From the IMG/VR virus record IMGVR_UViG_3300027816_000052, positions 1 through 64,000 of that record: a stretch of DNA of 64,000 nt, one strand, 5' to 3'. The first letter of the stretch is position 1. Every line of letters starts with the position of its first letter. This document shows, one piece after another, positions 1-55,699 of the stretch. The notes under the pieces were generated by a model, which had not been told where the DNA came from, made no database searches, and saw nothing but the letters and a program-made list of their open reading frames with translations. The position numbers were made by a program, and so were the translations under genes.

Positions 1-1
1 A

Positions 2-622
2 AAGAGAAGTTTTACATTTTCTCCGGGAGCATTTGCATCTTTTATAACATCATCATCAGGTGAAAGATTTGTTAAACATCTTAATAACAAATATGATGAG
101 ATTGTTGTTAATGGGGGTTTGGATTTAGAAAAAACACAAATTCAATCCTTACCGGATAATCTTCATGTTGAAGGGAGTATGTATTTAAATAGATGCAAAA
201 ATCTTCAATCCTTACCGGATAATCTTTATGTTGGGGGAAGTTTGGATTTAGGTTATACACCAATTCAATCCTTACCGGATAATCTTTATTTTGAAAAAGA
301 TTTGGATTTAGGAGGAACACCAATTCAATCCTTACCTGATAATCTTTATGTTGAAGGGAGTATGTATTTAAATAGATGCAAAAATCTTCAATCCTTACCG
401 GATAATCTTTATGTTGGGGGATATTTGAATTTACATGAAACACAAATTCAATCCTTACCGGATAATCTTTATGTTGGGGGATATCTAAATTTAGATAAAA
501 CACCAATTCAATCCTTGCCGGATAATCTTGATGTTAAAGGGGTAATTTATATTCGTGGAACACCATTAAAAGATAATGATGAATTGGTTGCGAAATATAG
601 GAAAAAATATAGGATTTTATAG
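2..622 (+). CDS. LRR-like repeat protein, 5'-truncated by the window edge
   Basis: 20/21-aa repeats IQSLPDNLxVxGxLxLxxT. The frame is open back to position 2, and nt 1-118 closely match the 5' part of paralog 42879..43697. Confidence 0.85.
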   Translation, partial: KRSFTFSPGAFASFITSSSGERFVKHLNNKYDEIVVNGGLDLEKTQIQSLPDNLHVEGSMYLNRCKNLQSLPDNLYVGGSLDLGYTPIQSLPDNLYFEKDLDLGGTPIQSLPDNLYVEGSMYLNRCKNLQSLPDNLYVGGYLNLHETQIQSLPDNLYVGGYLNLDKTPIQSLPDNLDVKGVIYIRGTPLKDNDELVAKYRKKYRIL

Positions 623-634
623 AACTTTTTAATT

Positions 635-1114
635 ATGAAAAAGATTAAATTAACAGAATCCGACCTTTATAATATTATAGAGCGAGTTCTTCTTGAGCAA
701 GAGGAAAATAATAAACGTGTTTGGAATACAACTCCAGAACGTTTTATTATGGTTCTTAATAATGTTTTTAATGGAAATTCTGAAATGTTCAGAAAAATTC
801 TTAATAAAAAATATGATAACATTATTATTAATGAAGATTTGGATTTGAGTGAATCACGAATTAAAACCTTACCTGATAATCTTAAAGTTAAAGGTTATCT
901 TAATTTAAATTATACAAAAATAGAATCCTTACCGGATAATCTTCATGTTGAGGGGAATTTGTATTTAGCTTTTACACGAATTTATTCTTTACCGGATAAT
1001 CTTCGTGTTGGAGGTAAAATCTATATTCATGGAACACTATTAGTTAGAAATAGTGATTTAGTTGCGGAATATAGAAACAAACATAAAATTGAAGGATATT
1101 TTTGGTCATCATGA
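635..1114 (+). CDS. LRR-like repeat protein with MKKIKLTESDL leader
   Basis: Three LPDNLxVxGxLxL repeats; N-terminus shared with 26441..27148 and 42879..43697. Confidence 0.85.
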   Translation: MKKIKLTESDLYNIIERVLLEQEENNKRVWNTTPERFIMVLNNVFNGNSEMFRKILNKKYDNIIINEDLDLSESRIKTLPDNLKVKGYLNLNYTKIESLPDNLHVEGNLYLAFTRIYSLPDNLRVGGKIYIHGTLLVRNSDLVAEYRNKHKIEGYFWSS

Positions 1115-2181: not shown

Positions 2182-2257
2182 GCTCCTATAGCTCAGTTGG
2201 TCAGAGCGCCAAGCTTATACCTTGGGTCTGTCACAGGTTCAAGTCCTGTTAGGAGTA
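2182..2257 (+). tRNA. tRNA-Ile(UAU)
   Basis: Cloverleaf: GCTCCTA/TAGGAGT; anticodon arm CCAAG-CTTATAC-CTTGG; T-arm ACAGG-TTCAAGT-CCTGT. Confidence 0.88.
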
Positions 2258-2265
2258 CGAAATAT

Positions 2266-2480: not shown

Positions 2481-2684
2481 ATGCAAAAAATATCTTTTAT
2501 TAAATTTAATTTTAAAAATGGATTAATTCATTTATTGACATTATTTTTTGGTAGTTTAATATTATTACCAATAACAGGTAATGAGATTTTTGAATTTAAA
2601 ATTTGGTTCATTATTTTATTGTTTCTTAGTATCTTTATGACGTACTTCAATTATCGTGTTTGGAAAAAATTAAAAATTAAATAA
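2481..2684 (+). CDS. Small two-TM membrane protein
   Basis: Two hydrophobic helices; preceded by the ATATTTAT motif. Confidence 0.6.
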   Translation: MQKISFIKFNFKNGLIHLLTLFFGSLILLPITGNEIFEFKIWFIILLFLSIFMTYFNYRVWKKLKIK

Positions 2685-3348
2685 TAATTCTTTGATTTAT
2701 TATGTTTGTGATAATATCAAGATATTTTTGAGAGGTAATCTCTTTAAAATATTTTTGTGCTGATGTATCAATAACACAAAAATCAATTTTTGCGTCATGA
2801 CATGCTTTTGACTTTGATTTATCATTTTCTTGAATTTGATTTAATTTTTTAATGCCATAAATTGGTTCATAGTGAAAAATTCCATTAAGTTCAAATGCAA
2901 TATTTAATGATGGAATATAAATATCTAATTCTGAGTTAATAGCTAATTTATCATTAAATTTGATATCTAGGTTTGGGTATAAAAATTCTAACTGCGATTG
3001 AATCCAAATTTCAAGTTTTGATTTTCTGTTGCCGTGTTTTTTATTTTTATTGTTATATGTTGCGGCACAAGATTTCGAACAAAAATGATTTATAGATCTA
3101 GAAATTTGATTATTTGCTTTGATAAATTTTTTATCACAATTAGTACATGTAACCTCTTTTCTTTTTTTTGCTGACAAACCATTACATTGTATTGAACAAA
3201 AACGTAATTGATTTTTTTGTTTTTCAATATTATATTTAATATGTCTTTTTTCAATATAGAAAAAATTATCACAATATTCACATATTAATCTTAACTTATC
3301 AAAATGTTTTGCATTATAATAATCAAATTCTGAATACGCTTTTTTCAT
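2677..3348 (-). CDS. Putative homing endonuclease (Zn-finger repeats plus Vsr/DUF559-like PD-(D/E)xK domain)
   Basis: CxxC...FCSxxC repeats, then ELDIYIPSLNIAFELNGIFHY and a C-terminal K..K..AC motif. Confidence 0.7.
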   Translation of the reverse strand: MKKAYSEFDYYNAKHFDKLRLICEYCDNFFYIEKRHIKYNIEKQKNQLRFCSIQCNGLSAKKRKEVTCTNCDKKFIKANNQISRSINHFCSKSCAATYNNKNKKHGNRKSKLEIWIQSQLEFLYPNLDIKFNDKLAINSELDIYIPSLNIAFELNGIFHYEPIYGIKKLNQIQENDKSKSKACHDAKIDFCVIDTSAQKYFKEITSQKYLDIITNIINQRIII

Positions 3349-18046: not shown

Positions 18047-18421
18047 TGGTGGAGATGGAGGGTTTCGAAACCCTCGTCTTCCGCTGTCAACCTAAAGAGA
18101 CTACACGCTTAGAACAACATTAGTTCTTAATGTTTCGAAATATCAAGTTTCACTATATACCAACTTGCAAAGGTTTTCTTTGGTTAATTTTAAGTATCAA
18201 CCACACTTTTTTTGGAATTTCTGTTGCTAGGTAAATTCCCAAATTACCCCTTGTAGGTGTTAGCCTTAGGCTACAGCTACTTCTTCAGTCTTGATGAGAC
18301 CCAAAACTGACATCTTGTCTAAAACGTTGCCGTTTACTTGTTTGAACCATTTTAACAAGGTTGATTCACCCTTGACGTGCCTATTTAACCTAATCATCGG
18401 AATCAAATCCAACTCATCCCC
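18047..18421 (-). ncRNA. ssrA: tmRNA, tag (A)GNVLDKMSVLGLIKTEEVAVA
   Basis: 5' GGGGATGAGTTGGATTTGATTCCG; 3' CGGAAGACGAGGG-TTTCGAAA-CCCTCCATCTCCACCA; G3:U70; tag frame 18331..18269 ending TAA. Confidence 0.93.
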
Positions 18422-26440: not shown

Positions 26441-27148
26441 TTATAATAAAGTATTTGCTTTTCCGCGAGTTAAATCTGTTGACCATTTATTTTTTTGGTC
26501 AATTGTATTTGCTTTACCTCTTTTTATTGGATAAGTTTCAGACCATTTTTGTTTTGGATTAGTCGGATTTGCCGGTCCTCTTTTTACACCGCTATCCCAT
26601 TTTGTTACCGCAGGATATGCTGGGTTTTCACCACTTGTTGGTTCTTGTTCTTTTAATTCACTGCTTTTTTTTAAAATTTTTCCTATTATACTACCGCCAA
26701 TTTTAATCCCATCTGGTAAATTTTTTATTTTTGTCCCACCAATTCTCAAATCACCACTAACATTAAGATCGTTAGGTAAAAATTTAATTCCAGTACCAGA
26801 TAAATCTAAATTACCTATAACATTAAGATTTTTTGGTAAAGCAATTAATTGTTCACAACCATATAAAATAAAAGACCCATTTATGGTAAGATTATCTGGT
26901 AAAAATTCAATATCCCCAAAGATGAATTGAATTCCTCCATTAATAATAACCTTATCATATTGTTGATTAAAAACCCTTGTTAATTTCTCAGAATCATTTC
27001 TAAATACATTTTTAAGAATCATTTTAAAATATTCTGGATTCTTATTAAAAATTCTTCTGTTATTTTTTTCTTCTTCTTGCTCAAGAAGGACCTTTCTAAC
27101 AATCCTATATAAATCTGATTCTGTTAATTTTATCTTTTTCATAACCAT
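26441..27148 (-). CDS. LRR-like protein with MKKIKLTESDL leader and C-terminal KW..RG.AN repeats
   Basis: LPDNL/LPKNL/LPNDL repeats; three KW-x5-7-RG-x-AN units. Confidence 0.8.
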   Translation of the reverse strand: MVMKKIKLTESDLYRIVRKVLLEQEEEKNNRRIFNKNPEYFKMILKNVFRNDSEKLTRVFNQQYDKVIINGGIQFIFGDIEFLPDNLTINGSFILYGCEQLIALPKNLNVIGNLDLSGTGIKFLPNDLNVSGDLRIGGTKIKNLPDGIKIGGSIIGKILKKSSELKEQEPTSGENPAYPAVTKWDSGVKRGPANPTNPKQKWSETYPIKRGKANTIDQKNKWSTDLTRGKANTLL

Positions 27149-31235: not shown

Positions 31236-31305
31236 TACTCCGTGAGAGATTCGAACTCTCAGCCTTCTCGTTAGGAGTGAGATGCTCATCCAGTTGAGAC
31301 GGGGC
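31236..31305 (-). tRNA. Degenerate tRNA-Arg(CCU)
   Basis: T-arm GAGAG-TTCGAAT-CTCTC and loop CTCCTAA present; nt 8-10 missing; C3xA70 mismatch. Confidence 0.6.
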
Positions 31306-35878: not shown

Positions 35879-35954
35879 TGGTGGACCGGAAGGGATTCGA
35901 ACCCTCATCCTCCTGAGTGCAAATCAGGTGCTCATCCAGTTGAGCTACCAGCCC
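35879..35954 (-). tRNA. tRNA-Ala(UGC), CCA encoded
   Basis: GGGCTGG/CCGGTCC with G3:U70; CCTGA-TTTGCAC-TCAGG. Confidence 0.95.
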
Positions 35955-40570: not shown

Positions 40571-40717
40571 TGTTTTTTTCTTTATCTTTAATTTCTTCTA
40601 TACGTCTGATGGTTGAGGGTTTAGTACATCTTCCACCGTAACCACAAAGATACGAAAGATTTCTGGTTTTTCTACGCACAATTTTACCTTGTTTACTCAT
40701 TTTGATTTTTTTATATG

Positions 40718-40789
40718 CGGTCTATGACGGGTTCGATCCGTCTACTCTACCGTGACAGGGTAGGATGATAGCCATTTCACCAATAGACC
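40718..40789 (-). tRNA. tRNA-Asp(GUC)
   Basis: GGTCTAT/ATAGACC; CTACC-CTGTCAC-GGTAG; T-loop ATCGAAC. Confidence 0.88.
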
Positions 40790-40800
40790 AAAAGAAATTG

Positions 40801-40872
40801 AGGACTCGGAGAATTACGATATCTCGACCTAAAAGTTAACAGCTTTTTGCTCTGCCCCTGAGCTACGAGTCC
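40801..40872 (-). tRNA. tRNA-Asn(GUU)
   Basis: GGACTCG/CGAGTCC; AAAAG-CTGTTAA-CTTTT; atypical T-arm. Confidence 0.82.
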
Positions 40873-40878
40873 TTATTG

Positions 40879-40951
40879 TGGTACTTCGTGGTTCCGAGCC
40901 ACGCTCCTCCCGTCTTCAGCGGGATGCTTTCACCAGATTAGCTTAAGTACC
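40879..40951 (-). tRNA. tRNA-Phe(GAA)
   Basis: GGTACTT/AAGTACC; TCCCG-CTGAAGA-CGGGA; T-loop CTCGGAA. Confidence 0.85.
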
Positions 40952-41006
40952 GTTATCAGTTACAAAACCTCTCAAATTAGGAACTTCACCGATGTAGTTT
41001 TTTTAG

Positions 41007-41090
41007 TGGAAGTAGTAAGACTCGAACTTACGAACCCCTTTCGGAGAAGTGATTTACAGTCACTTGGAATTGCCGCTATCCGATACTTCC
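41007..41090 (-). tRNA. tRNA-Tyr(GUA)
   Basis: GGAAGTA/TACTTCC; AGTGA-CTGTAAA-TCACT; long variable arm. Confidence 0.92.
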
Positions 41091-41094
41091 ATTT

Positions 41095-41158
41095 GCTGTC
41101 TCTCCATGCTGTCAATGCGGATGTTTTATCATGAATTTAGGTACCTCGCATTGCTCCC
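41095..41158 (-). ncRNA. Small RNA with TGACAG-N3-GGAGAGAC motif (copy 1)
   Basis: CAATGCG/CGCATTG stem followed by a motif shared with 42034..42103. Confidence 0.55.
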
Positions 41159-41164
41159 ATATTG

Positions 41165-41236
41165 TAGTCCCGACGAGAATCGAACTCGCATTACCGGAGT
41201 GAAAATCCGGGTTCCGAACCATTAGAAGACGGGACC
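41165..41236 (-). tRNA. tRNA-Glu(UUC)
   Basis: GGTCCCG/CGGGACT; CCGGA-TTTTCAC-TCCGG. Confidence 0.9.
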
Positions 41237-41260
41237 ATTTAAAATTTTAATGAACTAAAG

Positions 41261-41334
41261 CTGTCCCGGAAGGGGTCGAACCTTCAAACTTCCCCTTCAA
41301 AGGGGGATGACTTTGCCAATTTGTCTACAGGACA
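41261..41334 (-). tRNA. tRNA-Gln(UUG)
   Basis: TGTCCTG/CGGGACA; TCCCC-CTTTGAA-GGGGA; G73. Confidence 0.9.
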
Positions 41335-41339
41335 ATAAG

Positions 41340-41473
41340 CGGGGGAGGTTGGATTCGCACCAACAATCGTTACATTTCAGAGTAATTGCTTTACTGTTTC
41401 GAAGTATCTCATATTCTCACCACTCGGACGAGGGAAAATGAAATGAGTTTTTCTTTTTATTAGCTTCTCCCCC
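41340..41473 (-). ncRNA. tRNA-like RNA with large D-loop insertion and 8-nt anticodon loop
   Basis: GGGGGAG/CTCCCCC, GCT/AGC D-stem, TTAC/GTAA, GTTGG-TGCGAAT-CCAAC. Confidence 0.7.
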
Positions 41474-41485
41474 AAGAAATTATAG

Positions 41486-41568
41486 TGGATGTTGACGGAA
41501 TCGAACCGCGTTTCCAAACAGCACCCCCAACCTCATCATGAACGGTCGGTCAAGGTTTAGCAACACCC
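41486..41568 (-). ncRNA. tmRNA-TLD-like / Ala-acceptor tRNA-like RNA (83 nt)
   Basis: GGGTGTTG/CAACATCC with G3:U70, A73, T-loop TTCGATT, no D-stem. Confidence 0.7.
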
Positions 41569-41579
41569 AAAAAAGTTAG

Positions 41580-41653
41580 TTCTCCCAGCGAGACTCGAAC
41601 TCACAACTCCCATATTAAAAGTATGGTACTCTAACCAATTGAGTTACAGGAGA
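41580..41653 (-). tRNA. tRNA-Lys(UUU)
   Basis: TCTCCTG/TGGGAGA; CCATA-CTTTTAA-TATGG. Confidence 0.9.
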
Positions 41654-41658
41654 TTATG

Positions 41659-41792
41659 TGATGAGTGATGGATTCGAACCACCATAAGCTGCTTCGTTTA
41701 GGATATCCTCTAAGCAACAGCGGGATATGTATAGTGTTGGGTAACTATATCACTAATATCCACCGCAACCCGTTCCCTTGGGCTATCTCATC
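41659..41792 (-). ncRNA. tRNA-like RNA with extended anticodon and variable arms
   Basis: GATGAG/CTCATC, GCCC/GGGT D-stem, GGTGG-TTCGAAT-CCATC T-arm, no canonical anticodon loop. Confidence 0.7.
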
Positions 41793-41797
41793 AAATT

Positions 41798-41942
41798 GAG
41801 AGGACACCGATACCTCCTCTCTGGGTGGGTCTAATTTCGAATTCTTTTATGACTTGTTCTGAAAGTCGCCAACATACTCATCATTTCTGATTTAGTCATT
41901 GCACGTCCCACTTAACTTTAAACGCGGTCGGTTTTAAGGTAT
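41798..41942 (-). ncRNA. Candidate structured RNA downstream of tRNA-Pro
   Basis: GTGGG/CCCAC, GACTT/AAGTC, GAGAGGA/TCCTCTC, ATACCT/AGGTAT. Confidence 0.45.
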
Positions 41943-41950
41943 GTATTGTG

Positions 41951-42026
41951 TCGAGGTGAGAGGATTTGAACCTCCATGATATCTTCGCCCCAAACGAAGA
42001 GACTTAGCCAATTAGTCCACACCTCG
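41951..42026 (-). tRNA. tRNA-Pro(UGG)
   Basis: CGAGGTG/CACCTCG; CTTCG-TTTGGGG-CGAAG. Confidence 0.9.
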
Positions 42027-42033
42027 ATAATTA

Positions 42034-42103
42034 ATCGTCTCTCCGATCTGTCACACTTATTCATTGTTACGTCGATTGACACTAAGTGTTTAAATTCAAT
42101 CGA
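42034..42103 (-). ncRNA. Small pseudoknot RNA with TGACAG-N3-GGAGAGAC motif (copy 2)
   Basis: TCGATTGA/TCAATCGA stem, ACACTT/AAGTGT pseudoknot, ATCG-GAGAGA-CGAT hairpin. Confidence 0.6.
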
Positions 42104-42168
42104 ACATGATAATAATCAAATTATTATTATCTAAATTTCTTGGTATTACAATATGTCAACGAACGTCA

Positions 42169-42199
42169 CAAAGTTATGTCTTATTCTTCAAACTACCAA
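42169..42199 (-). promoter_or_regulatory. Bacteroidota-type promoter for the main tRNA/ncRNA operon
   Basis: TTG-N20-TAACTTTG. Confidence 0.75.
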
Positions 42200-42220
42200 A
42201 ACTTTTTTGGTATAAAATTT

Positions 42221-42247
42221 AAAACCCCGGATTTTTTGTCCGGGGTT
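42221..42247 (-). terminator. Intrinsic terminator
   Basis: AACCCCGGA-N7-TCCGGGGTT followed by U-rich sequence on the minus strand. Confidence 0.7.
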
Positions 42248-42414
42248 ACATTTTCTTTGTGTTAAAAATTATTTCACAAAAACCCCGGAATACATAATGG
42301 GAGCATAAAACCAATCACACTGATTTGGTTTTACTACCTCAAGATTATGTTTACGTAGATTGTTCATTTAAAATAATTTTCAATAAATATATACAAGTTT
42401 TGAAAAAAGTCAAA

Positions 42415-42819
42415 TCATTCTAATTTTTTTTCTAAATTTAAATAATCGATTGCTTTTTGTAATAATTTTACATCATCATTAAATCTACCCAAACCCAAGT
42501 TGCAGTTGTTGCATATATAACCCCTAAACGTATCAGTAAAATGACAATGATCTAAAACCCATGATGTTGTATGTTTATCACATATTGGACAATTTCCGGA
42601 TGGTGGTGGTGAATACTTAATTTTTAAATGTTTTCTTATTTCAGCTAATTTTTGATTGCAACTTTTGCATGTATTTTTTCTTCCAGCATCGATTGTTGAG
42701 AAGAATGGAAATTCGTCAATTTGTTTTTCAATATTGCAATTTCTGCATGTTTTTGTTTCTCCTGAAATAACTGGTTTTATGTTTTCTTCAGGTTCAAATA
42801 AATTTAATTGATTCATCAA
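42415..42819 (-). CDS. Endonuclease VII-like (His-Me) nuclease
   Basis: CPICD...VLDHCH...FRGYICNNCNLGLGRFNDD; N-terminal CxxC zinc motifs. Confidence 0.85.
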   Translation of the reverse strand: MMNQLNLFEPEENIKPVISGETKTCRNCNIEKQIDEFPFFSTIDAGRKNTCKSCNQKLAEIRKHLKIKYSPPPSGNCPICDKHTTSWVLDHCHFTDTFRGYICNNCNLGLGRFNDDVKLLQKAIDYLNLEKKLE

Positions 42820-42878
42820 ATTTTATTTGAACATAATGAGGTTCTGTGTTAAAGTAAACTATTCATATATTTATGGTT

Positions 42879-43697
42879 ATGAAAAAGATTAAATTAACAG
42901 AATCGGATTTATATAGAATTGTTAGAAAGGTTCTTCTTGAGCAAGATGAAAAAAAGAAAAGTTTTACATTTTCTCCGGGTTCATTTGAATCTCTTATAAC
43001 ATCATCATCAGGTGAAAGATTTGTTAAACATCTTAATAACAAATATGATAGGGTTATTGTTAATGAAGAGTTGGATTTAAGTGAAACACCAATTCAATCC
43101 TTGCCGGATAATCTTCATGTTGAGGGAAATTTGGATTTAGAAGGAACGCAAATTCAATCCTTACCGGATAATCTTCATGTTGGGGGGAATTTGTTTTTAT
43201 ATGGATGCAAAAATCTTAAATCCTTACCGGATAATCTTTATGTTGGGGGAAATTTGGAGTTAGATGGAATACCAATTCAATACTTAGGGAATAATATTCA
43301 TGTTAAGGGAAATTTGGAGTTAGATGGAATACCAATTCAATCCTTACCGGATAATCTTCATGTTGGGGGAGATTTGAGTTTAGTAGGAACACCAATTCAA
43401 TCCTTACCGGATAATCTTCATGTTGGGGGATATTTGGATTTATATGGAACACCAATTCAATCCTTACCGGATAATCTTCATGTTGGGGGAAGTTTGTATT
43501 TAAGAGGAACACCAATTCAATCCTTACCGGATAATCTTCATGTTGAGGGAGATTTGTTTTTAGGTAAAACACCAATTCAATCCTTACCGAATAATCTTGA
43601 CGTTAAGGGGACAATTTATATTAAAGGAACACCATTAAATGATAATGATGAATTGGTTAAGAAATATGAAGAAAAATATAGAATTATTAGAGTTTAA
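42879..43697 (+). CDS. LRR-like repeat protein with MKKIKLTESDL leader
   Basis: About nine tandem 20/21-aa repeats; start re-called because ATATTTAT overlaps the ATG at 42873. Confidence 0.88.
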   Translation: MKKIKLTESDLYRIVRKVLLEQDEKKKSFTFSPGSFESLITSSSGERFVKHLNNKYDRVIVNEELDLSETPIQSLPDNLHVEGNLDLEGTQIQSLPDNLHVGGNLFLYGCKNLKSLPDNLYVGGNLELDGIPIQYLGNNIHVKGNLELDGIPIQSLPDNLHVGGDLSLVGTPIQSLPDNLHVGGYLDLYGTPIQSLPDNLHVGGSLYLRGTPIQSLPDNLHVEGDLFLGKTPIQSLPNNLDVKGTIYIKGTPLNDNDELVKKYEEKYRIIRV

Positions 43698-45012: not shown

Positions 45013-47004
45013 ATGAGTGAAGAATCGAAAATAATTTCATCGTTTTCATTACAAGAAACATTAAATCCGAAAATTTGGGATAATTATAAAAATCCTGAAA
45101 AAGCTTCGCTTAAACCAGAAATAAGAAAGAAACTTCTTGAGATTGCTCATGAGTTTATGGATTTTATTGATATTGAGTTTTTTGTTGATGATATTATTTT
45201 TACCGGTTCTCTTTCAAATTTTAATTGGTCAGATTTTTCTGACGTTGATTTACATCTTGAAGTTGATTTTACCCAGTTTGATACTGATTCAGTTGAGTTA
45301 TATCGTGAACTGTTTAATTTAAAAAAACTCTTATTTAATACCAATCATGATATTACCATAAAGGGGTTTGAGGTTGAGCTTTATGTTCAAGATATTATTG
45401 AACCCCACACAAGTGGTGGGATTTATTCGGTTCTTTTTGATGAATGGACGGTTGTACCACAAAAAAAAGATGTTAAAATAGATAGGAATCTTTTAAAGAA
45501 AAAAATTAAAACGTGGACCAATAAAATTGATGAAATTACCGAACAAGTTAAAAATGGTGATTATGACGAATCAATTTTATTAATTAAAGAATTAAGAGAT
45601 AAGATTAAAAAATATAGAAAAGCTGGTCTTGAAAAGAATGGTGAATTTTCATATGAGAATTTGGTATTCAAATACTTAAGAAGGGGTAAATATATTGAAA
45701 GATTAATAGACTTATCCAATCAATTAAAAGATAAAAAGCTGTCTTTAGAATCGTTAAATGAAGCTAAATTAATTGGTGGTGATTTTAAATGGGGTGGTGG
45801 ACCAAAAGAACACGGTAAAAGAGCATTCGGTAATTGGCAATCTGATAACGCTTATGATTTAATGGCTCCGGTAGGTACGCCCGTTTATTCATTAACTGAT
45901 GGGACAATCACAAAAACATATTTCACTGAAGGAGGTGAAAGTGGAAAACAAACTAAAATCTATGGTTGGCAAGTAACTATAAAAGGTGATGATAATAATT
46001 TTTTTTATACCCATTTAGGTGAAATAAATCCAAACATAAAGGTTGGTAATAGAATTTCTAAAGGTGATTTAATTGGTACAATTGGCGCACCTACAAGTGG
46101 TAGAAAATGGTATCCACATTTACACATTGCGGTTCAAAATGGTGATTTAAAATCATACATAAATGATACGGCAATTATAAAAAAAGAAGAAAGTATTTTT
46201 GATAAGATTTTAAAGTTTTTAGGTCTTGAAGGATTAATAACATCAGAAGAAACAAATTTTGTTAAAGAGTTAGAAAGTTTAATACAGTCAAATACTGAGT
46301 TAAAATGGGAAAAAAATAAAAAGATAGAATATAATGATAATACTAAAACACTGCAAAGCATTCTACAATTATTAGGATATTCTTTACCCAAATGGGGTGT
46401 TGATGGAAAGTTTGGTCCTGAAACAAATACGGCTGTTATTAATTTCCAAAAAGAAAATAATTTAACACCAAATGGTGTTGTTGATAACATCACACTTAAA
46501 GTAATTCTTAAAGAATTATCAAAAATTGATTTGAATCAAGATAAAATTAGTGGAATTCAAAAAAATAAAGAAAATCTAAAAATAAACCCAACAAGTAATA
46601 AAAATAAAATTTTAAAGTTTTTAACCGATAAGGGATTAACAATAGAACAAGCATCTGGAGTAGCTGGTAATTTACAAGCAGAATCTAATTTTAATCCGAG
46701 TGCTGTTGGCGATAATGGAACATCTTTAGGTATTGCTCAATGGCATAAAAGTAGAAAAGATAATTTAATTAATTTTTGTAATTCAAAAAAACAAAATTCA
46801 GAATCACTTGATTGTCAATTAGATTTCTTGTGGAGTGAGTTAAATACAAAATATTCAAATGTTTTATCCTCTATTAAGGCAAGTAACTCTGCTGGTGATG
46901 TAGCTGAAATTTTTGCATCAAAATACGAAAAACCAAGTAGTACAGATTATAGTAAAAGAATAAATTTTGCAGAAAAAATATATAGTGATACAACAATTTC
47001 TTAA
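45013..47004 (+). CDS. Nucleotidyltransferase + M23 peptidase + PG-binding + tail-lysozyme fusion
   Basis: FTGSLSNFNWSDFSDVDLHL; YDLMAPVGTPV...YTHL...HLHI; LQLLGY...VDGKFGPET; AGNLQAESNFNP...GIAQW. Confidence 0.8.
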   Translation: MSEESKIISSFSLQETLNPKIWDNYKNPEKASLKPEIRKKLLEIAHEFMDFIDIEFFVDDIIFTGSLSNFNWSDFSDVDLHLEVDFTQFDTDSVELYRELFNLKKLLFNTNHDITIKGFEVELYVQDIIEPHTSGGIYSVLFDEWTVVPQKKDVKIDRNLLKKKIKTWTNKIDEITEQVKNGDYDESILLIKELRDKIKKYRKAGLEKNGEFSYENLVFKYLRRGKYIERLIDLSNQLKDKKLSLESLNEAKLIGGDFKWGGGPKEHGKRAFGNWQSDNAYDLMAPVGTPVYSLTDGTITKTYFTEGGESGKQTKIYGWQVTIKGDDNNFFYTHLGEINPNIKVGNRISKGDLIGTIGAPTSGRKWYPHLHIAVQNGDLKSYINDTAIIKKEESIFDKILKFLGLEGLITSEETNFVKELESLIQSNTELKWEKNKKIEYNDNTKTLQSILQLLGYSLPKWGVDGKFGPETNTAVINFQKENNLTPNGVVDNITLKVILKELSKIDLNQDKISGIQKNKENLKINPTSNKNKILKFLTDKGLTIEQASGVAGNLQAESNFNPSAVGDNGTSLGIAQWHKSRKDNLINFCNSKKQNSESLDCQLDFLWSELNTKYSNVLSSIKASNSAGDVAEIFASKYEKPSSTDYSKRINFAEKIYSDTTIS

Positions 47005-52558: not shown

Positions 52559-55500
52559 ATGGAAGATGAAAAACTAACAATATGGCAACGACTTTCTAAA
52601 GGATTTGGTCCAAACTCATTACTTGGACAAGAAAGTCCAACATTTAAATTTGATAAGAAGGTTTTATTAAAAACACCGAATAAGCAAGAGTACGAAAGAG
52701 AAAAACTCCAAGCACAACAAACAGCTTATTTAACATACCAATGGAGTAAGATTGAAAATAATTTATATACACAATCAGTATATTATGAACCCACTAGATT
52801 AGCATCATATTATGATTATGAGAGTATGGAATATTTTCCGGAAATTTCAGCAGCATTAGATACATTTTCGGAAGAATCTACAACGCCAAATCAAGATGGT
52901 CAAATGTTACAGATTTATTCTGAATCAAAAAGAATTAAATCAATTTTAACAGATTTATTCTATAATCAATTAGATATTAACACAAATCTACCCATGTGGA
53001 CAAGAAATACTTGTAAGTATGGTGATAATTTTGTGTTTTTAAAACTAGACCCAGAAAAAGGTATTGTTGGTTGTTTTCAACTACCAAATATTGAAATTGA
53101 ACGTATTGAAAAGGGGATGGTTAAACGTCCGGGTGGGACACCAAATAGCGACCCAGAAAATAAACAAATGAAATTCTCTTGGAAACAAAAAGATTTAGAT
53201 TTTAATACTTGGGAGGTCGCACATTTTAGATTATTGGGTGATGATAGAAAATTACCATACGGTACTTCGATGTTAGAAAAAGCGAGAAGAATTTGGAAAC
53301 AATTAGTTCTTGCTGAAGATGCAATGTTAATTTATAGAACATCTAGAGCACCGGAAAGAAGAGTATTTAAAGTTTTTGTTGGTAATATGGATGATAAAGA
53401 TGTTGAAGCATATGTGCAAAGATTTGCAAATAAATTTAAGCGAGACCAAGTAGCGGACCCAAAAACGGGTAATGTGGATTTACGTTTTAATCAAATGGCG
53501 GTAGACCAAGATTATTTTGTACCGGTTAGGGATATTGCTGCACCTAATCCGATTGATACATTACCGGGAGCGTGTATTGATTTAAATACCAGAATTCCCC
53601 TTCTTGATGGTAGAACTTTAACTTTACAACAAATAATTAATGAGTGGGATAATGGTAATAGAAACTTATGGGTTTATTCTTGTGACCCAAATACAGGGTC
53701 CGTACATCCGGGTATGGTAACTTGGGCTGGTGTAACAAGAAAAGACGCTGAAGTTATTAAAATTACATTAGACAATGGTGAAGAGGTGATTACAACTCCA
53801 GACCATAAATTTGTTCATAGAACTAGAGAATTTGTTGAAGCGAAAGATTTAATTGTTGGGGATAGTTTAATGCCTTTTTATTCAAGAACCGAAAAAATAA
53901 AGACCAACACTAATGATTATCACCAAATTTTTGATAATGAAAAAAATCAATGGGTTTTTACGCATAGAATGGTAAAAAACAGTACTGTTGGTAGTTCTTT
54001 AGTAAAAGAATGGGTTTTTAATTCTGAATTTAAAAATAAAGATAAAAAAATAATTCACCATAAAGACCATAATCGCTTTAATAATAATCCAAATAATTTA
54101 CTAATAATGAATGGTGAAGACCATTTAAAATATCACCAACATATCATAAAAGAAACGATTTGGAAAGATATTGAACTTAATAAGAAAAAAATTTCAGAAG
54201 GTATTAAAAATTATTTAAATAATCTTTCTTCAGATGAATTACAAAAAAGACATGAAAGAATTAATAATCCAATATCAAAAGCTAAAACAACTAAAAAGTT
54301 ATTGGAATGGAATAAAAATGATGAAAATTTAAAAAATAAAGGTAAAAAAATTTCAAAAGCTTATACAGAAGAAAGAAAAAATAAGATAAAGGAATTAAAT
54401 TTAATAAGGTGGTTGAATGATGATTATCGAAATAAAGTTTTTTCTAAAAAACAAACAATAACATTTGATGATTATATATATAATTCATTTGTTAGTGAAT
54501 TTAAAAAGACTTTACGTGCTGATTTAGCGTTAAAGAACTTAAATAATTCTTTTGAATTTATTTCACATTTTAAACAAATTAATGAGGAAATTAGAAGTTC
54601 GTTAACAAACTTAAATGAATTCACGCAAAACCATGTAGATAAAATGGTTAAACAACAAGGGTTTAAAAATTTTACTGAATGGAAACATTTTGAGTGTAAA
54701 AAGAGAGGATTTAAAAATATTCGTCAATGGAAATATAATGTTGAGAAAGAAATTTATTTTAACCATAAAATAACAAAAATTGAATGGTTAACAAATAAAA
54801 TTGACACTGGTACGATTACGGTTGATGGTAATGAATTATATTCAAAATCTCACACTTTTGCTATTGAAAGTGGTATTTTTATTAAAAATTCTAACCTTTC
54901 TGAAATTGCAGATATAGAATACATCCAGAAAAAACTTTTAACAGCATTAAGGATACCAAAAGCGTTCCTTGGGTTTGAAGAAGTTGTTGCTGATGGTAAA
55001 AATCTTGCGTTACAAGATATTCGTTTTGCTAGAACAATTAACAGAATACAAAAAAGTATGTTAGCGGAATTAAATAAAATTGCTATTATACATTTATTTA
55101 TTTTAGGTTTTGAAGATGAACTTTCTAACTTTACATTAGGATTAACAAACCCATCAACACAAGCTGATTTATTAAAGGTTGAGGTTTGGAAAGAGAAAAT
55201 CTTACTTTATAAAGACGCTGTTGCAGGAATTGAGGGTATTGCACCAACTTCACATTCTTGGGCTAAAAAACATATTCTTGGTTTCTCGGATGATGAAATT
55301 AAACTTGATATTCAACAACAAAGAATTGAAAAGGCGGTCGCAAAAGAACTTGAGAACACACCAAATGTGATTGTAAAAACAGGTATTTTTGATAGTGTTG
55401 ATGCAATCTACGGTCAAAAAGGTGGTGGTACTCAAGCTGGAACTCCCCCTCAAGAACCAACATCTGATATGACAATGCCTGAAACTAGTCCAGCATCATC

Positions 55501-55699
55501 ACCATCAATAACTCCACCAGAAGCTCCTGAGAGCGCACCAACTGAAACTCCAACAACAGTACCTGAATCAAAACAGGAAAGAGTAAATATTTTACTTGAA
55601 GGTGGTCTTTTAAATGAAGATGAAGAAATCGATTTGAGTAAAGCTAGAATTCAATTAGGTGAAATGGAAGAACATTTAAATAAACTTCTAAAGTCGTGA
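52559..55699 (+). CDS. gp20: Portal protein (T4 gp20-like) containing an intein
   Basis: YPEISAALD, MLIYRTSRAPERRVF, DYFVP, IDTLPGA|...|SNLSEIADIEYIQKKL. Confidence 0.92.
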   Translation: MEDEKLTIWQRLSKGFGPNSLLGQESPTFKFDKKVLLKTPNKQEYEREKLQAQQTAYLTYQWSKIENNLYTQSVYYEPTRLASYYDYESMEYFPEISAALDTFSEESTTPNQDGQMLQIYSESKRIKSILTDLFYNQLDINTNLPMWTRNTCKYGDNFVFLKLDPEKGIVGCFQLPNIEIERIEKGMVKRPGGTPNSDPENKQMKFSWKQKDLDFNTWEVAHFRLLGDDRKLPYGTSMLEKARRIWKQLVLAEDAMLIYRTSRAPERRVFKVFVGNMDDKDVEAYVQRFANKFKRDQVADPKTGNVDLRFNQMAVDQDYFVPVRDIAAPNPIDTLPGACIDLNTRIPLLDGRTLTLQQIINEWDNGNRNLWVYSCDPNTGSVHPGMVTWAGVTRKDAEVIKITLDNGEEVITTPDHKFVHRTREFVEAKDLIVGDSLMPFYSRTEKIKTNTNDYHQIFDNEKNQWVFTHRMVKNSTVGSSLVKEWVFNSEFKNKDKKIIHHKDHNRFNNNPNNLLIMNGEDHLKYHQHIIKETIWKDIELNKKKISEGIKNYLNNLSSDELQKRHERINNPISKAKTTKKLLEWNKNDENLKNKGKKISKAYTEERKNKIKELNLIRWLNDDYRNKVFSKKQTITFDDYIYNSFVSEFKKTLRADLALKNLNNSFEFISHFKQINEEIRSSLTNLNEFTQNHVDKMVKQQGFKNFTEWKHFECKKRGFKNIRQWKYNVEKEIYFNHKITKIEWLTNKIDTGTITVDGNELYSKSHTFAIESGIFIKNSNLSEIADIEYIQKKLLTALRIPKAFLGFEEVVADGKNLALQDIRFARTINRIQKSMLAELNKIAIIHLFILGFEDELSNFTLGLTNPSTQADLLKVEVWKEKILLYKDAVAGIEGIAPTSHSWAKKHILGFSDDEIKLDIQQQRIEKAVAKELENTPNVIVKTGIFDSVDAIYGQKGGGTQAGTPPQEPTSDMTMPETSPASSPSITPPEAPESAPTETPTTVPESKQERVNILLEGGLLNEDEEIDLSKARIQLGEMEEHLNKLLKS
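53573..54889 (+). mobile_element. Intein (439 aa) with HNH homing endonuclease
   Basis: CIDLNTRIPLLDG, TTPDHKF block B, WVFTHR...IHHKDHNRFNNNPNNL, HTFAIESGIFIKN|S. Confidence 0.9.

What the first reader, a model, noticed from the sequence alone, without database searches (positions are those of the whole stretch)
41486..41568. 83-nt tmRNA-like alanyl-acceptor RNA with no mRNA domain
Seen on the minus strand: GGGTGTTG...CAACATCC-A acceptor with G3:U70 and A73 (AlaRS identity), a normal T-loop (GCGG-TTCGATT-CCGT) and no D-stem. The 5' segment ends ...CTTGA-CCGAC and the 3' junction reads ...TTTGG-AAAC-T-arm. This mirrors the tmRNA in this window (TTTGAT-TCCG...CGGA-AGAC-T-arm). The ~300 nt that would hold the pseudoknots and tag frame are replaced by ~35 nt (CCGACC/GGTTGG hairpin). 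Known: tmRNAs lacking a tag frame are described from jakobid mitochondria. Inference: an SmpB-binding rescue RNA that frees ribosomes without a degradation tag, an SmpB/AlaRS decoy, or a nuclease decoy. It coexists with a full tmRNA and a normal tRNA-Ala, so it is not a substitute for either.
Basis: partly seen in the sequence, partly recalled or inferred. Interest (0 to 1): 0.82.

Follow-up and report, generated by a model that had tools for sequence, protein, structure and literature searches.

The report
Phage alanine-type tRNA top-half RNA
A large freshwater phage carries, inside a tRNA gene array, a small transcribed RNA gene that keeps only the upper half of a tRNA together with the conserved marks for charging with alanine; it resembles the anticodon-less 'tRNA-like domain only' versions of the ribosome-rescue RNA tmRNA already known from phages, but it belongs to a separate, undescribed small family.

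Summary
Window 41486-41568 (-) is an 83-nt gene lying in register in a tRNA array of a 256-kb T4-like phage. It has an 8-bp acceptor with G3:U70 and A73, a 4-bp T-stem with loop UUCGAUU, and no D-arm or anticodon arm. Metatranscriptome contigs cover the array.

I found six homologues in three further lineages of phage-like metagenome contigs. Five of eight acceptor pairs change compensatorily, while G3:U70, A73, G1-C72 and G8-C65 never change, and the hairpin loops are not conserved. So it is a selected, non-decoding RNA with alanine identity, not a decaying tRNA.

The 'tmRNA-like' reading is only partly supported. Tag-less 'TLD-only' tmRNAs are already known in phages (mycobacteriophage DS6A; a similar molecule inhibits tmRNA), and I found dozens in IMG/VR. 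The candidate family lacks their single-stranded D-loop analogue. It scores 13.6 bits on Rfam tmRNA and 19.6 on a TLD-only model, below ordinary tRNAs (22-27) and far below true members (44-98).

Most likely it is an alanine-chargeable minihelix that competes for tmRNA/tRNA-Ala handling factors. This function is inferred, not shown. I rate it a new variant of a known kind.

The parts
41486..41568 (-). The RNA gene itself (83 nt; CCA not encoded, next bases are CUA)
   Evidence: Sequence; acceptor/T-arm scan; R2 family model 87.7 bits; six homologues
41561..41568 (-). Acceptor 5' strand GGGUGUUG (RNA positions 1-8; G3 at 41566)
   Evidence: Pairs with 41487-41494; 5 of 8 pairs covary in the family; G1, G3 and G8 invariant
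41486..41494 (-). Acceptor 3' strand CAACAUCC (41487-41494; U70 equivalent at 41489) plus discriminator A (41486)
   Evidence: G3:U70 is G.U in 7 of 7 and A73 is invariant
41495..41509 (-). T-arm: 4-bp stem GCGG/CCGU with canonical loop UUCGAUU. Together with the 8-bp acceptor it gives the standard 12-bp coaxial stack
   Evidence: the outer stem pair covaries (GU/AU/CG)
41527..41549 (-). Central hairpin CCGACC / GGUUGG with 11-nt loop GUUCAUGAUGA. It is not an anticodon arm
   Evidence: MFE fold. The stem is identical in L282 but the loop differs (CGAAGACAAUAC). RNAalifold predicts a central hairpin in all members. No 5-bp stem with a 7-nt loop can be drawn (read directly from the sequence)
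41510..41519 (-). 3' junction GUUUGG-AAAC. GUUUGG can pair with CUAAAC (41555-41560). UG..UGGAAAC is the most conserved non-helical sequence of the family
   Evidence: The junction helix is weak (G.U-rich) and RNAalifold does not call it. UGGAAAC was partly imposed by the search pattern
41579..41653 (-). tRNA-Lys(UUU), immediately upstream in the same transcript
   Evidence: ARAGORN and Rfam
40997..42365 (-). Transcribed stretch of the array seen in metatranscriptome contigs, with a promoter-like site at 42386-42413 and a hairpin at 42223-42247 at its upstream edge
   Evidence: read laying: contigs 41265-42250, 40997-42237, 41549-42365 and 41692-41923 at depth 9-45, with flanks near 0; consensus scan
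18047..18421 (-). Full-length phage tmRNA with intact tag frame. This is context and not part of the element
   Evidence: Rfam 100.4 bits; tag GNVLDKMSVLGLIKTEEVAVA*
35879..35954 (-). Ordinary tRNA-Ala(UGC) with G3:U70, A73 and encoded CCA. This is context

Best explanation
The element is a functional phage gene for a small tRNA-like RNA made only of the tRNA 'top half' plus a variable hairpin body.

Shown here:
- It lies in register in a tRNA array that is transcribed.
- It has a standard-length 12-bp acceptor/T-arm stack (8 + 4) and a canonical T-loop.
- It belongs to a family of seven sequences in four phage lineages. In that family the acceptor stem covaries, but G1-C72, G3:U70, G8-C65 and A73 never change, and no loop triplet is conserved.

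Inferred from established knowledge: it is cut out by RNase P and 3' processing like its tRNA neighbours and receives CCA. Host alanyl-tRNA synthetase then charges it with alanine, because G3:U70 with A73 suffices for this even in minihelices. It cannot decode a codon.

The most likely role is further inference. It would act as a competitor or modulator for the factors that handle tmRNA and tRNA-Ala (AlaRS, EF-Tu and possibly SmpB). That would resemble the tag-less 'TLD-only' tmRNAs of phages, whose model molecule inhibits trans-translation. It could either dampen host tmRNA tagging or allow tag-free engagement of stalled ribosomes. Because the TLD's single-stranded D-loop analogue is missing, any SmpB contact would have to use the conserved UG..UGGAAAC junction.
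For: - Architecture and position.
- Transcription: RNA-run contigs cover 40997-42365 at depth 9-45, while the flanking stretches 42323-42828 and 40707-41000 are near 0.
- Homologues: L282 comes from a related phage (48% aa identity in a neighbouring ORF, 82% identical tRNA-Ser). L291, L298 and L246 form one lineage and L222 and L219 another, all on phage-like contigs.
- Covariation: 96.2% of cells paired against 37-55% in slid controls, with 0 of 500 shuffles reaching this. Five acceptor pairs change on both sides. G3:U70 is G.U in 7 of 7. RNAalifold independently gives the same acceptor, T-arm and central hairpin.
- Hairpin loops are not conserved, so it does not decode.
- Alanine identity rules and minihelix charging: PMC9976931.
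- Precedent for phage tag-less TLD RNAs and their inhibition of tmRNA: PMC4131195 and PMC11915505.
- TLD-only RNAs also sit in phage tRNA arrays (L125, L172, L173).
- No cellular genome of 185,579 species carries this 3' junction in a tRNA or tmRNA.
Against: - No experiment shows a discrete 83-nt RNA, CCA addition, alanylation or any protein binding. The contigs show only a precursor-like transcript.
- The family fails both tmRNA-type models: Rfam 13.6 bits, and R1 at 19.6 bits or at most 26 for relatives, against 44-98 for true TLD-only RNAs.
- It lacks the single-stranded D-loop analogue. The D-loop/T-loop interaction is reported as required for SmpB binding (PMC3968760).
- The phage keeps its own tagging tmRNA. 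A pure inhibitor of trans-translation would work against that RNA.
- Minor bacterial alanine determinants are absent: G4-C69 is U-A here and there is no G20.
- Only seven sequences are known. Part of the conserved 3' junction was imposed by the search pattern.
- No SmpB gene was found among the SmpB-sized ORFs of the window.
Confidence: 0.4

Rival explanations
1. It is an RNA-processing punctuation element (a 't-element'). The acceptor/T-arm minihelix would exist only to recruit RNase P and 3' processing enzymes, which cut the polycistronic transcript at that point. The excised RNA would have no further role.
For: - It lies in a co-transcribed array.
- In L298 and L291 the homologue stands alone between co-oriented small ORFs, with no tRNAs nearby. 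That is where a processing signal would be useful.
- Only the top half, which RNase P recognises, is conserved.
- Plant mitochondrial t-elements are a precedent (PMC1920247, listed).
Against: Processing needs neither G3:U70 nor A73. Both are invariant in 7 of 7 sequences while the neighbouring pairs flip freely. In the window it sits between tRNAs that already supply processing sites.
Confidence: 0.15
2. It is a decoy or sponge against host defence. The stable tRNA-like top half would soak up a host nuclease or toxin that attacks acceptor stems, tRNA-Ala or tmRNA, or an RNase recruited by tmRNA-SmpB. This would protect the phage's own tRNAs and tmRNA.
For: - The phage invests heavily in its own tRNAs and a tmRNA.
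- Two further non-canonical acceptor/T-arm RNAs flank the element.
- An RNA-repair-type HAD domain gene lies 2.6 kb from the L298 homologue, which is weak evidence.
- tRNA and tmRNA fragments acting as phage counter-defence RNAs have a precedent in AcrIIIA1 (PMC11662646).
Against: No defence or counter-defence gene is consistently linked to the family. The known tRNA-targeting defence nucleases mostly cut anticodon loops, and this RNA has none (my own knowledge). Strict retention of the alanine identity set points to AlaRS more than to a nuclease.
Confidence: 0.15
3. It is a dedicated alanine donor outside translation. The charged RNA would escape decoding and supply Ala to an aminoacyl-tRNA-dependent transferase, for example one acting on cell-wall, lipid or peptide substrates.
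For: The alanine identity is conserved on an RNA that cannot decode. Several such transferases recognise mainly the acceptor arm (my own knowledge, not tested).
Against: No candidate transferase gene was found next to any family member, and the neighbourhoods share no gene.
Confidence: 0.07
4. It is a decaying tRNA-Ala (or truncated tmRNA) pseudogene that happens to keep its ends.
For: - tRNA and tmRNA detectors do not call it.
- Its folding energy is not exceptional.
- It is not related in sequence to any tRNA in the window.
Against: - The same armless architecture is kept in four lineages, with compensatory changes and invariant identity elements.
- All 12 helix pairs and the T-loop are intact while the body bears no trace of a D-arm or anticodon arm.
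- It is identical in three independent assemblies and it is transcribed.
Confidence: 0.05

Closest known systems
TLD-only (CDS-less, 'standard, no CDS') tmRNA of phages, prototype mycobacteriophage DS6A (Mao et al. 2009 RNA Biol 6:355; Hudson, Lau & Williams 2014, PMC4131195; tmRNA database 2025, PMC11915505)
   Same: - Phage-encoded and about 70-90 nt.
- G3:U70/A73 acceptor plus T-arm, with a short hairpin where the mRNA and pseudoknot domain would be, and no anticodon.
- Some members sit inside phage tRNA arrays (L125, L172, L173).
- The 3' junction NRAC before the T-arm is shared; GAAA/AAAC variants exist (L150, L178, L181).
   Different: - TLD-only RNAs keep a 9-13-nt single-stranded D-loop analogue with GG and usually UUCGAC. 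They also keep helix 2a opened by C:G next to GA/GA, a 7-bp acceptor and a 5-bp T-stem.
- They score 58-75 bits on Rfam tmRNA and 44-98 on R1.
- The candidate family has no such single strand (CC in place of GG, and not conserved), has an 8 + 4 stack, and scores 13.6 and at most 26 bits.
Reduced mitochondrial tmRNA of jakobids and oomycetes (Rfam RF02544; Jacob et al. 2004; PMC3590771)
   Same: A tRNA-Ala-like domain with G3:U70 and A73 that lacks an mRNA-like domain. It is presumed to act in ribosome rescue without tagging.
   Different: Most are two-piece RNAs from permuted genes of organelles and co-occur with a dedicated SmpB. The candidate is a one-piece phage RNA. No RF02544 match outranked the weak tmRNA hit in the clan competition.
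tRNA-Ala acceptor-T minihelix (synthetic substrate; Francklyn & Schimmel 1989, cited in PMC9976931)
   Same: A 12-bp acceptor/T-stem stack with G3:U70 and A73. That is all AlaRS needs for specific charging.
   Different: The minihelix is a laboratory construct. The candidate is a natural gene with an extra conserved junction and a hairpin body.
t-elements of plant mitochondria (PMC1920247)
   Same: tRNA-like acceptor/T-arm structures embedded in transcripts and cut by tRNA-processing enzymes.
   Different: t-elements carry no conserved aminoacylation identity, whereas here G3:U70 and A73 are invariant.
Stable RNAs C and D (species 1 and 2) of the phage T4 tRNA cluster (from my own knowledge; not retrieved here)
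   Same: Non-tRNA stable RNAs encoded within a phage tRNA gene cluster and processed with the tRNAs. Their function is unknown.
   Different: The two 134-nt neighbours of the candidate (41340-41473 and 41659-41792) are closer in size to these T4 RNAs.

Membership tests
tRNA (Rfam RF00005) | Cloverleaf with a D-arm and a 5-bp anticodon stem carrying a 7-nt loop | tested here: not met
   ARAGORN makes no call. There is no Rfam hit at gathering threshold. In the permissive scan the tRNA model is outranked by a 13.6-bit tmRNA hit. No D-stem or 5/7 anticodon arm can be drawn, and the hairpin has 6 bp with an 11-nt loop.
tRNA (Rfam RF00005) | 12-bp acceptor/T-stem stack with a canonical T-loop | tested here: met
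   8 + 4 bp and loop UUCGAUU.
tmRNA, full length (Rfam RF00023) | mRNA-like domain with a tag reading frame, plus pseudoknots | tested here: not met
   Only 83 nt. The Rfam alignment deletes 286 model positions and gives 13.6 bits against a gathering score of 47.
TLD-only tmRNA (DS6A type) | Acceptor stem with G3:U70 and discriminator A73 | tested here: met
   Present, and invariant in 7 of 7 homologues.
TLD-only tmRNA (DS6A type) | Single-stranded D-loop analogue of 10-13 nt between helix 1 and helix 2a (GG...UUCGAC), which contacts the T-loop (PMC1168896, PMC3968760) | tested here: not met
   Infernal deletes this segment when aligning the candidate. The sequence has AACCUUGA without GG. The segment is not conserved in L282, L291 or L222. 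In the MFE fold it is paired with GUUUGG.
TLD-only tmRNA (DS6A type) | Helix 2a opened by C:G beside tandem G.A pairs, followed by GAC and helix 12 | tested here: inconclusive
   Infernal aligns C-UAAAC/GUUUG-G to helix 2a and GAAAC to GGAC. However, the helix is weak, RNAalifold does not predict it, and there is no 5' GA partner.
TLD-only tmRNA (DS6A type) | Scores as a member with a covariance model of the family | tested here: not met
   On R1 the candidate scores 19.6 bits, relatives score at most 26.3 or fall below reporting, ordinary tRNAs score 22-32, and true members score 44-98. Rfam tmRNA gives 58-75 bits for true members against 13.6 for the candidate.
TLD-only tmRNA (DS6A type) | Binds SmpB and inhibits or takes part in trans-translation | not testable with these tools
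   This needs binding and reporter assays. No SmpB gene was found among ten SmpB-sized ORFs of the window.
Mitochondrial reduced tmRNA (Rfam RF02544) | Match to the mt-tmRNA covariance model; usually two-piece and permuted | tested here: not met
   No RF02544 match is listed. The best match within the clan was RF00023 at 13.6 bits. The gene is one-piece and not permuted.
Alanine-accepting RNAs (AlaRS substrates) | G3:U70 with A73 and G2-C71 on an acceptor helix (bacterial set: A73, G2-C71, G3.U70, G4-C69, G20; PMC9976931) | tested here: met
   The major determinants are present and conserved. The minor ones are absent (position 4:69 is U-A, and there is no G20). Actual charging is not testable here.

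The most novel reading that the evidence does not exclude
The seven sequences define a separate class of phage-encoded, alanine-charged, anticodon-less adaptor RNAs that work without the SmpB-binding D-loop of tmRNA. They might deliver alanine to stalled ribosomes or to a non-ribosomal acceptor. Alternatively, they might reprogramme host ribosome rescue in a way that spares the phage's own tagging tmRNA.
Probability: 0.2. Interest if true: 0.85.

Novelty: new variant of a known kind. Interest (0 to 1): 0.6.

Why it matters
Natural RNAs that carry alanine identity but no anticodon were known only as tmRNA and its reduced forms. Only nine 'standard, no CDS' sequences are listed among 97,179 in the 2025 tmRNA database.

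This element shows that phages maintain, under selection, at least one more design of such an RNA. It is invisible to ARAGORN and to Rfam's curated thresholds, and here it sits beside a complete tagging tmRNA.

The work also showed that canonical TLD-only mini-tmRNAs are common in viral contigs and often lie in tRNA arrays. Phage interference with, or takeover of, ribosome rescue may therefore be much more widespread than annotated.

Both groups give short, easily synthesised RNAs with clear tests: AlaRS charging, SmpB and EF-Tu binding, and non-stop reporter assays.

Tried and rejected
- **Close relatives in GenBank phages:** none by megablast. Distant blastn hits only the neighbouring tRNAs.
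- **IMG/VR copies:** only 100% identical ones, so they carry no covariation information.
- **Synteny through the tail lysozyme (45013-47004) and the 274-aa ORF (42873-43697):** relatives at 47% identity or less have no tRNA array nearby, and the 274-aa gene turned out to be a multicopy gene.
- **Paralogy with a window tRNA or the tmRNA:** none. No paralogue in other fetched parts of the contig.
- **Decoding or suppressor tRNA:** rejected. No 5-bp/7-nt anticodon arm can be drawn, the hairpin loops are not conserved among homologues, and the long ORFs read through in code 11.
- **tRNA-Sec-like 8/5 or 9/4 architecture:** rejected. There is no D-stem or long variable arm, the discriminator is A, and the stack is 12 bp, not 13.
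- **ARAGORN 'tmRNA' calls in L178/L187 and L222:** judged artefacts. One spans a tRNA-Lys and coding-like sequence, and Rfam supports none of them.
- **Origin from a cellular tmRNA or tRNA with the same 3' junction:** the GTDB scan gave two chance matches inside coding DNA.
- **MAFFT alignment of all TLD-only RNAs (A2):** discarded because the 5' ends were staggered and the subtypes paired in different registers. Replaced by a six-sequence seed and Infernal realignment.
- **Conserved neighbouring protein genes as a clue to function:** none found.

Full report
**What is there.** On the minus strand, window 41568 to 41486 reads GGGUGUUG-CUAAAC-CUUGA-CCGACC-GUUCAUGAUGA-GGUUGG-GGGUGCU-GUUUGG-AAAC-GCGG-UUCGAUU-CCGU-CAACAUCC-A. 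Positions 1-8 pair with 75-82, with G3 opposite U (the tRNA 3:70 position). The next base is A, the discriminator. GCGG/CCGU closes a canonical T-loop. The 8 acceptor pairs and 4 T-stem pairs make the same 12-bp stack as 7 + 5 in a tRNA. There is no D-stem, and the only internal hairpin has 6 bp and an 11-nt loop. No 5-bp stem with a 7-nt loop can be drawn. CCA is not encoded.

ARAGORN finds 22 tRNAs in the window but nothing here. Rfam at gathering thresholds finds 20 tRNAs and a tmRNA at 18047-18421 (100.4 bits) but nothing here. In a permissive scan the best match is the tmRNA model with its central 286 positions deleted, at 13.6 bits against a gathering score of 47. The minimum-energy fold gives acceptor, junction helix CUAAAC/GUUUGG, hairpin and T-arm, but its energy is not unusual (z = -0.72).

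**More than chance.** A scan for a T-arm followed by a strand that pairs with a 7-mer 45-170 nt upstream gives 26 hits in the window, against 3.1 on average in shuffled sequence. All G+C-rich hits are annotated tRNAs except two on the array strand: the candidate and a 134-nt element just downstream. Only tRNA-Ala and the candidate combine G3:U70 with A73. The element begins 10 nt after tRNA-Lys(UUU) and ends 12 nt before the next element, which is the spacing of an array member.

**The genome.** The window is the first 64 kb of IMG/VR contig 3300027816_000052, also filed as Ga0209990_10000008 (256,029 bp). It encodes a T4-type portal with an intein/HNH insert, a gp23 capsid protein, a large terminase, a ClpB-like ATPase and a protein with a type IX secretion (CHU_C) domain. 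This points to a large phage of a Bacteroidota host. It has no close relative among GenBank phages.

The full tmRNA has an intact tag frame, GNVLDKMSVLGLIKTEEVAVA*. It is similar to the tag of a distant relative (L014). The tRNA-Ala(UGC) is ordinary.

**Expression.** The stretch occurs in freshwater metagenomes and in five freshwater metatranscriptome runs. Contigs of four RNA runs cover 41265-42250, 40997-42237, 41549-42365 and 41692-41923 at word depth 9-45. The adjacent HNH gene (42323-42828) and the stretch 40707-41000 are near zero. This unevenness argues for RNA and against contaminating DNA.

The contigs bridge both junctions of the candidate, as expected for a precursor transcript. A promoter-like site (42413-42386) and a hairpin (42247-42223) lie at the upstream limits. 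Contigs cannot show the ends of a mature small RNA, so a discrete 83-nt species remains untested.

**The known class it resembles.** A descriptor scan of IMG/VR looked for GGG, then a long body, then GGUUCGAUUCC, seven bases and UCCA, with lengths that exclude ordinary tRNA-Ala. It was row-capped at 116 loci, yet after filtering for true acceptor pairing it returned about 44 distinct elements that ARAGORN does not call.

Most of these share one plan:
- a 7-bp acceptor with G3:U70;
- a single-stranded AUGGNUUCGAC-type segment;
- helix 2a, capped by a small hairpin (UAAAGCC...GG);
- GGAC, then a 5-bp T-arm.

This is a complete tmRNA tRNA-like domain (TLD) with nothing else. Rfam's tmRNA model scores five tested examples at 58-75 bits, above its threshold, and three of them lie in phage tRNA arrays. 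A model seeded from six of them (R1) scores about 30 clear members at 44-98 bits. In the Infernal alignment 94.6% of cells pair, and all six helix-2a pairs show compensatory changes.

The class is in the literature. [quoted passage not shown] 2009). Jakobid mitochondria have the other known tag-less form (PMC3590771). The 2025 database counts only nine 'standard, no CDS' sequences, so the abundance seen here is itself worth noting.

**Is the candidate a member? No, by the defining features.** On R1 the candidate scores 19.6 bits. That is below the window's tRNA-Ala (26.9), tRNA-Cys (23.0) and tRNA-Glu (22.2), so the score reflects only the generic acceptor and T-arm.

Published TLD features are 10-13 unpaired nucleotides between helix 1 and helix 2a, tandem G.A pairs (19-GA-20 with 333-GA-334), a conserved C21 and a conserved GAC before helix 12 (PMC1168896). 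A D-loop/T-loop interaction is needed for SmpB binding (PMC3968760). In the candidate, Infernal deletes the D-loop analogue altogether and aligns C-UAAAC/GUUUG-G to helix 2a and GAAAC to GGAC. The 5' segment has CC where TLDs have GG.

Variants with GAAA or AAAC in place of GGAC do exist among TLD-only RNAs (L150, L178/L187, L181, L180, L188). All of them keep a 9-13-nt single strand with GG. They fall in a grey zone on both models, which suggests but does not prove a continuum.

**Homologues of the candidate itself.** IMG/VR holds only identical copies. The single metagenome scan (UGGAAAC-NN-GGUUCGAUUCC) was swamped by an abundant unrelated tRNA, but it also returned six true homologues.

- **L282** is GAGCCAUG-CUAAUGG-CCGACC-(12-nt loop)-GGUUGG-UGCAUGCUGUUUGGAAAC-GCGG-UUCGAUU-CCGU-CAUGGUUC-A. 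Its contig is from a related phage: a neighbouring ORF is 48% identical to window ORF 2677-3348, and a tRNA-Ser is 82% identical. There the element lies between an intron-bearing tRNA and tRNA-Ser.
- **L291, L298 and L246** (74-75 nt) and **L222 and L219** (83-84 nt) are on phage-like contigs. L291, L298 and L246 have no tRNA nearby. In L291 and L298 the element sits in a gap between co-oriented small ORFs.

On the seven-sequence alignment (A4), 96.2% of cells pair, against 84.4% in shuffles (0 of 500 reach it) and 37-55% in slid controls. Five of eight acceptor pairs change on both sides. The outer T-stem pair covaries. G1-C72, G3.U70 (7 of 7), G8-C65 and A73 are invariant. RNAalifold, without my structure, returns the same 8-bp acceptor, 4-bp T-arm and a central hairpin.

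The loops of that hairpin differ completely (GUUCAUGAUGA, CGAAGACAAUAC, CGUUAAAC and others), so nothing like an anticodon is conserved. The short junction helix (Y-U-A with U-G-G) pairs in all members. However, it is G.U-rich, was partly imposed by the search pattern, and RNAalifold does not call it, so I treat it as uncertain. UG...UGGAAAC is the most conserved unpaired sequence.

A family model (R2) finds no second copy in the parts of the contig I could fetch. A scan of one genome from each of 185,579 species for the family's 3' junction gave only two chance matches inside coding DNA. No cellular tRNA or tmRNA is therefore the evident source.

**How it most likely works.**
- *Shown:* a transcribed array member; a tRNA top half of standard length; selection on pairing and on the alanine identity nucleotides; no decoding loop.
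- *From established knowledge:* RNase P, CCA-adding enzyme, T-loop modification enzymes and EF-Tu all recognise the acceptor/T-arm half. G3:U70 with A73 directs AlaRS even on minihelices (PMC9976931).
- *Inferred:* the RNA is excised, receives CCA and is charged with alanine. Because it cannot decode, its effect must come from what it binds.

The only natural precedents for such RNAs are tmRNA and its tag-less derivatives. My best guess (0.4) is therefore that it competes for, or engages, the tmRNA-handling machinery. It might dampen host tagging, or engage stalled ribosomes without a tag.

Several points weaken this. The missing D-loop analogue makes SmpB binding doubtful. The phage's own tagging tmRNA would also be inhibited by a pure sponge. 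No SmpB gene is in the window.

Rivals are a processing punctuation element (0.15), a decoy against host nucleases or toxins (0.15), a non-ribosomal alanine donor (0.07) and a pseudogene (0.05). The invariant G3:U70 and A73 argue against punctuation alone and against decay.

**Verdict.** The kind (tag-less, anticodon-less alanine acceptor in a phage) is already known. This family is a new variant that fails the defining D-loop feature and both covariance-model tests. The function rests on inference, and the decisive experiments are simple.

Noticed in passing
L062:2105-2182, L125:2458-2535, L172:13093-13170, L173:10377-10454, L093:49-127 and about 25 more (alignment A5): Canonical TLD-only 'mini-tmRNAs' (78-88 nt) are abundant in IMG/VR viral contigs, and some lie inside phage tRNA arrays. 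Rfam tmRNA scores them 58-75 bits, all helix-2a pairs covary, and ARAGORN calls none. The 2025 tmRNA database lists only 9 'standard, no CDS' sequences.
   Followed up: yes
window 41659-41792 (-): A 134-nt tRNA-like RNA between tRNA-Pro and tRNA-Lys. It has an acceptor, D-arm and T-arm, a long variable-type arm, and an extended arm of about 45 nt where the anticodon arm should be. Rfam tRNA gives 20.6 bits with a 75-nt insert, and fold z = -2.7. No homologue in 2.7 Mb fetched.
   Followed up: partly
window 41340-41473 (-): A second 134-nt acceptor/T-arm RNA lies directly downstream of the candidate. It has GGGGGAG/CUCCCCC, discriminator G, a non-canonical T-loop UGCGAAU and an A/U-rich body; fold z = -2.7. 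No homologue found.
   Followed up: partly
window 42873-43697 (+); also near window 1-1100 and 26441-27148, and L034, L036, L039, L047: The 274-aa ORF next to the array is a multicopy gene, with at least seven paralogues (42-78% identity) in the same 256-kb contig. Related contigs often end inside it. It has no Pfam or PHROG match and may be a mobile or homing element.
   Followed up: partly
window 18047-18421 (-): ARAGORN misses the phage's full tmRNA, which Rfam scores at 100.4 bits. Its tag, GNVLDKMSVLGLIKTEEVAVA*, is unusually long and resembles the tag of a distant relative (L014: GNIFNKLSAVGLIRTEENISVA*).
   Followed up: partly
window 52559-55699 (+): The T4-type portal gene is interrupted by an intein with an HNH endonuclease domain (1046 aa in total).
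   Followed up: no
L178:5416-5571 (-) and L282:2570-2850 (+): These are tRNA genes with large inserts in phage arrays. One is tRNA-Tyr-like with an insert of about 80 nt after the anticodon (Rfam tRNA 47 bits over 156 nt). The other is a tRNA interrupted by a group-I-intron-like sequence (Rfam Intron_gpI 28 bits, below threshold).
   Followed up: no
L189-L308 (for example L192, L194, L205): One tRNA-like sequence (CCUCUGGUAGUCUAUUGGUAAGGAC...UGGAAACURGGUUCGAUUCCYAG...) recurs in more than 90 mostly freshwater metagenome contigs, with variable anticodon-stem sequence. It saturated the metagenome scan.
   Followed up: no
L178:5583-5965, L187:4341-4723, L222:649-1016: ARAGORN reports 'tmRNA' genes that span a tRNA-Lys or coding-like sequence, and Rfam does not support them. 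They appear to be artefacts caused by a TLD-like 3' end.
   Followed up: yes
window 2182-2258 (+) and 31236-31305 (-): There is a tRNA-Ile with anticodon UAU, and a borderline tRNA (Rfam 29.3 bits, just at threshold) that ARAGORN does not call.
   Followed up: no
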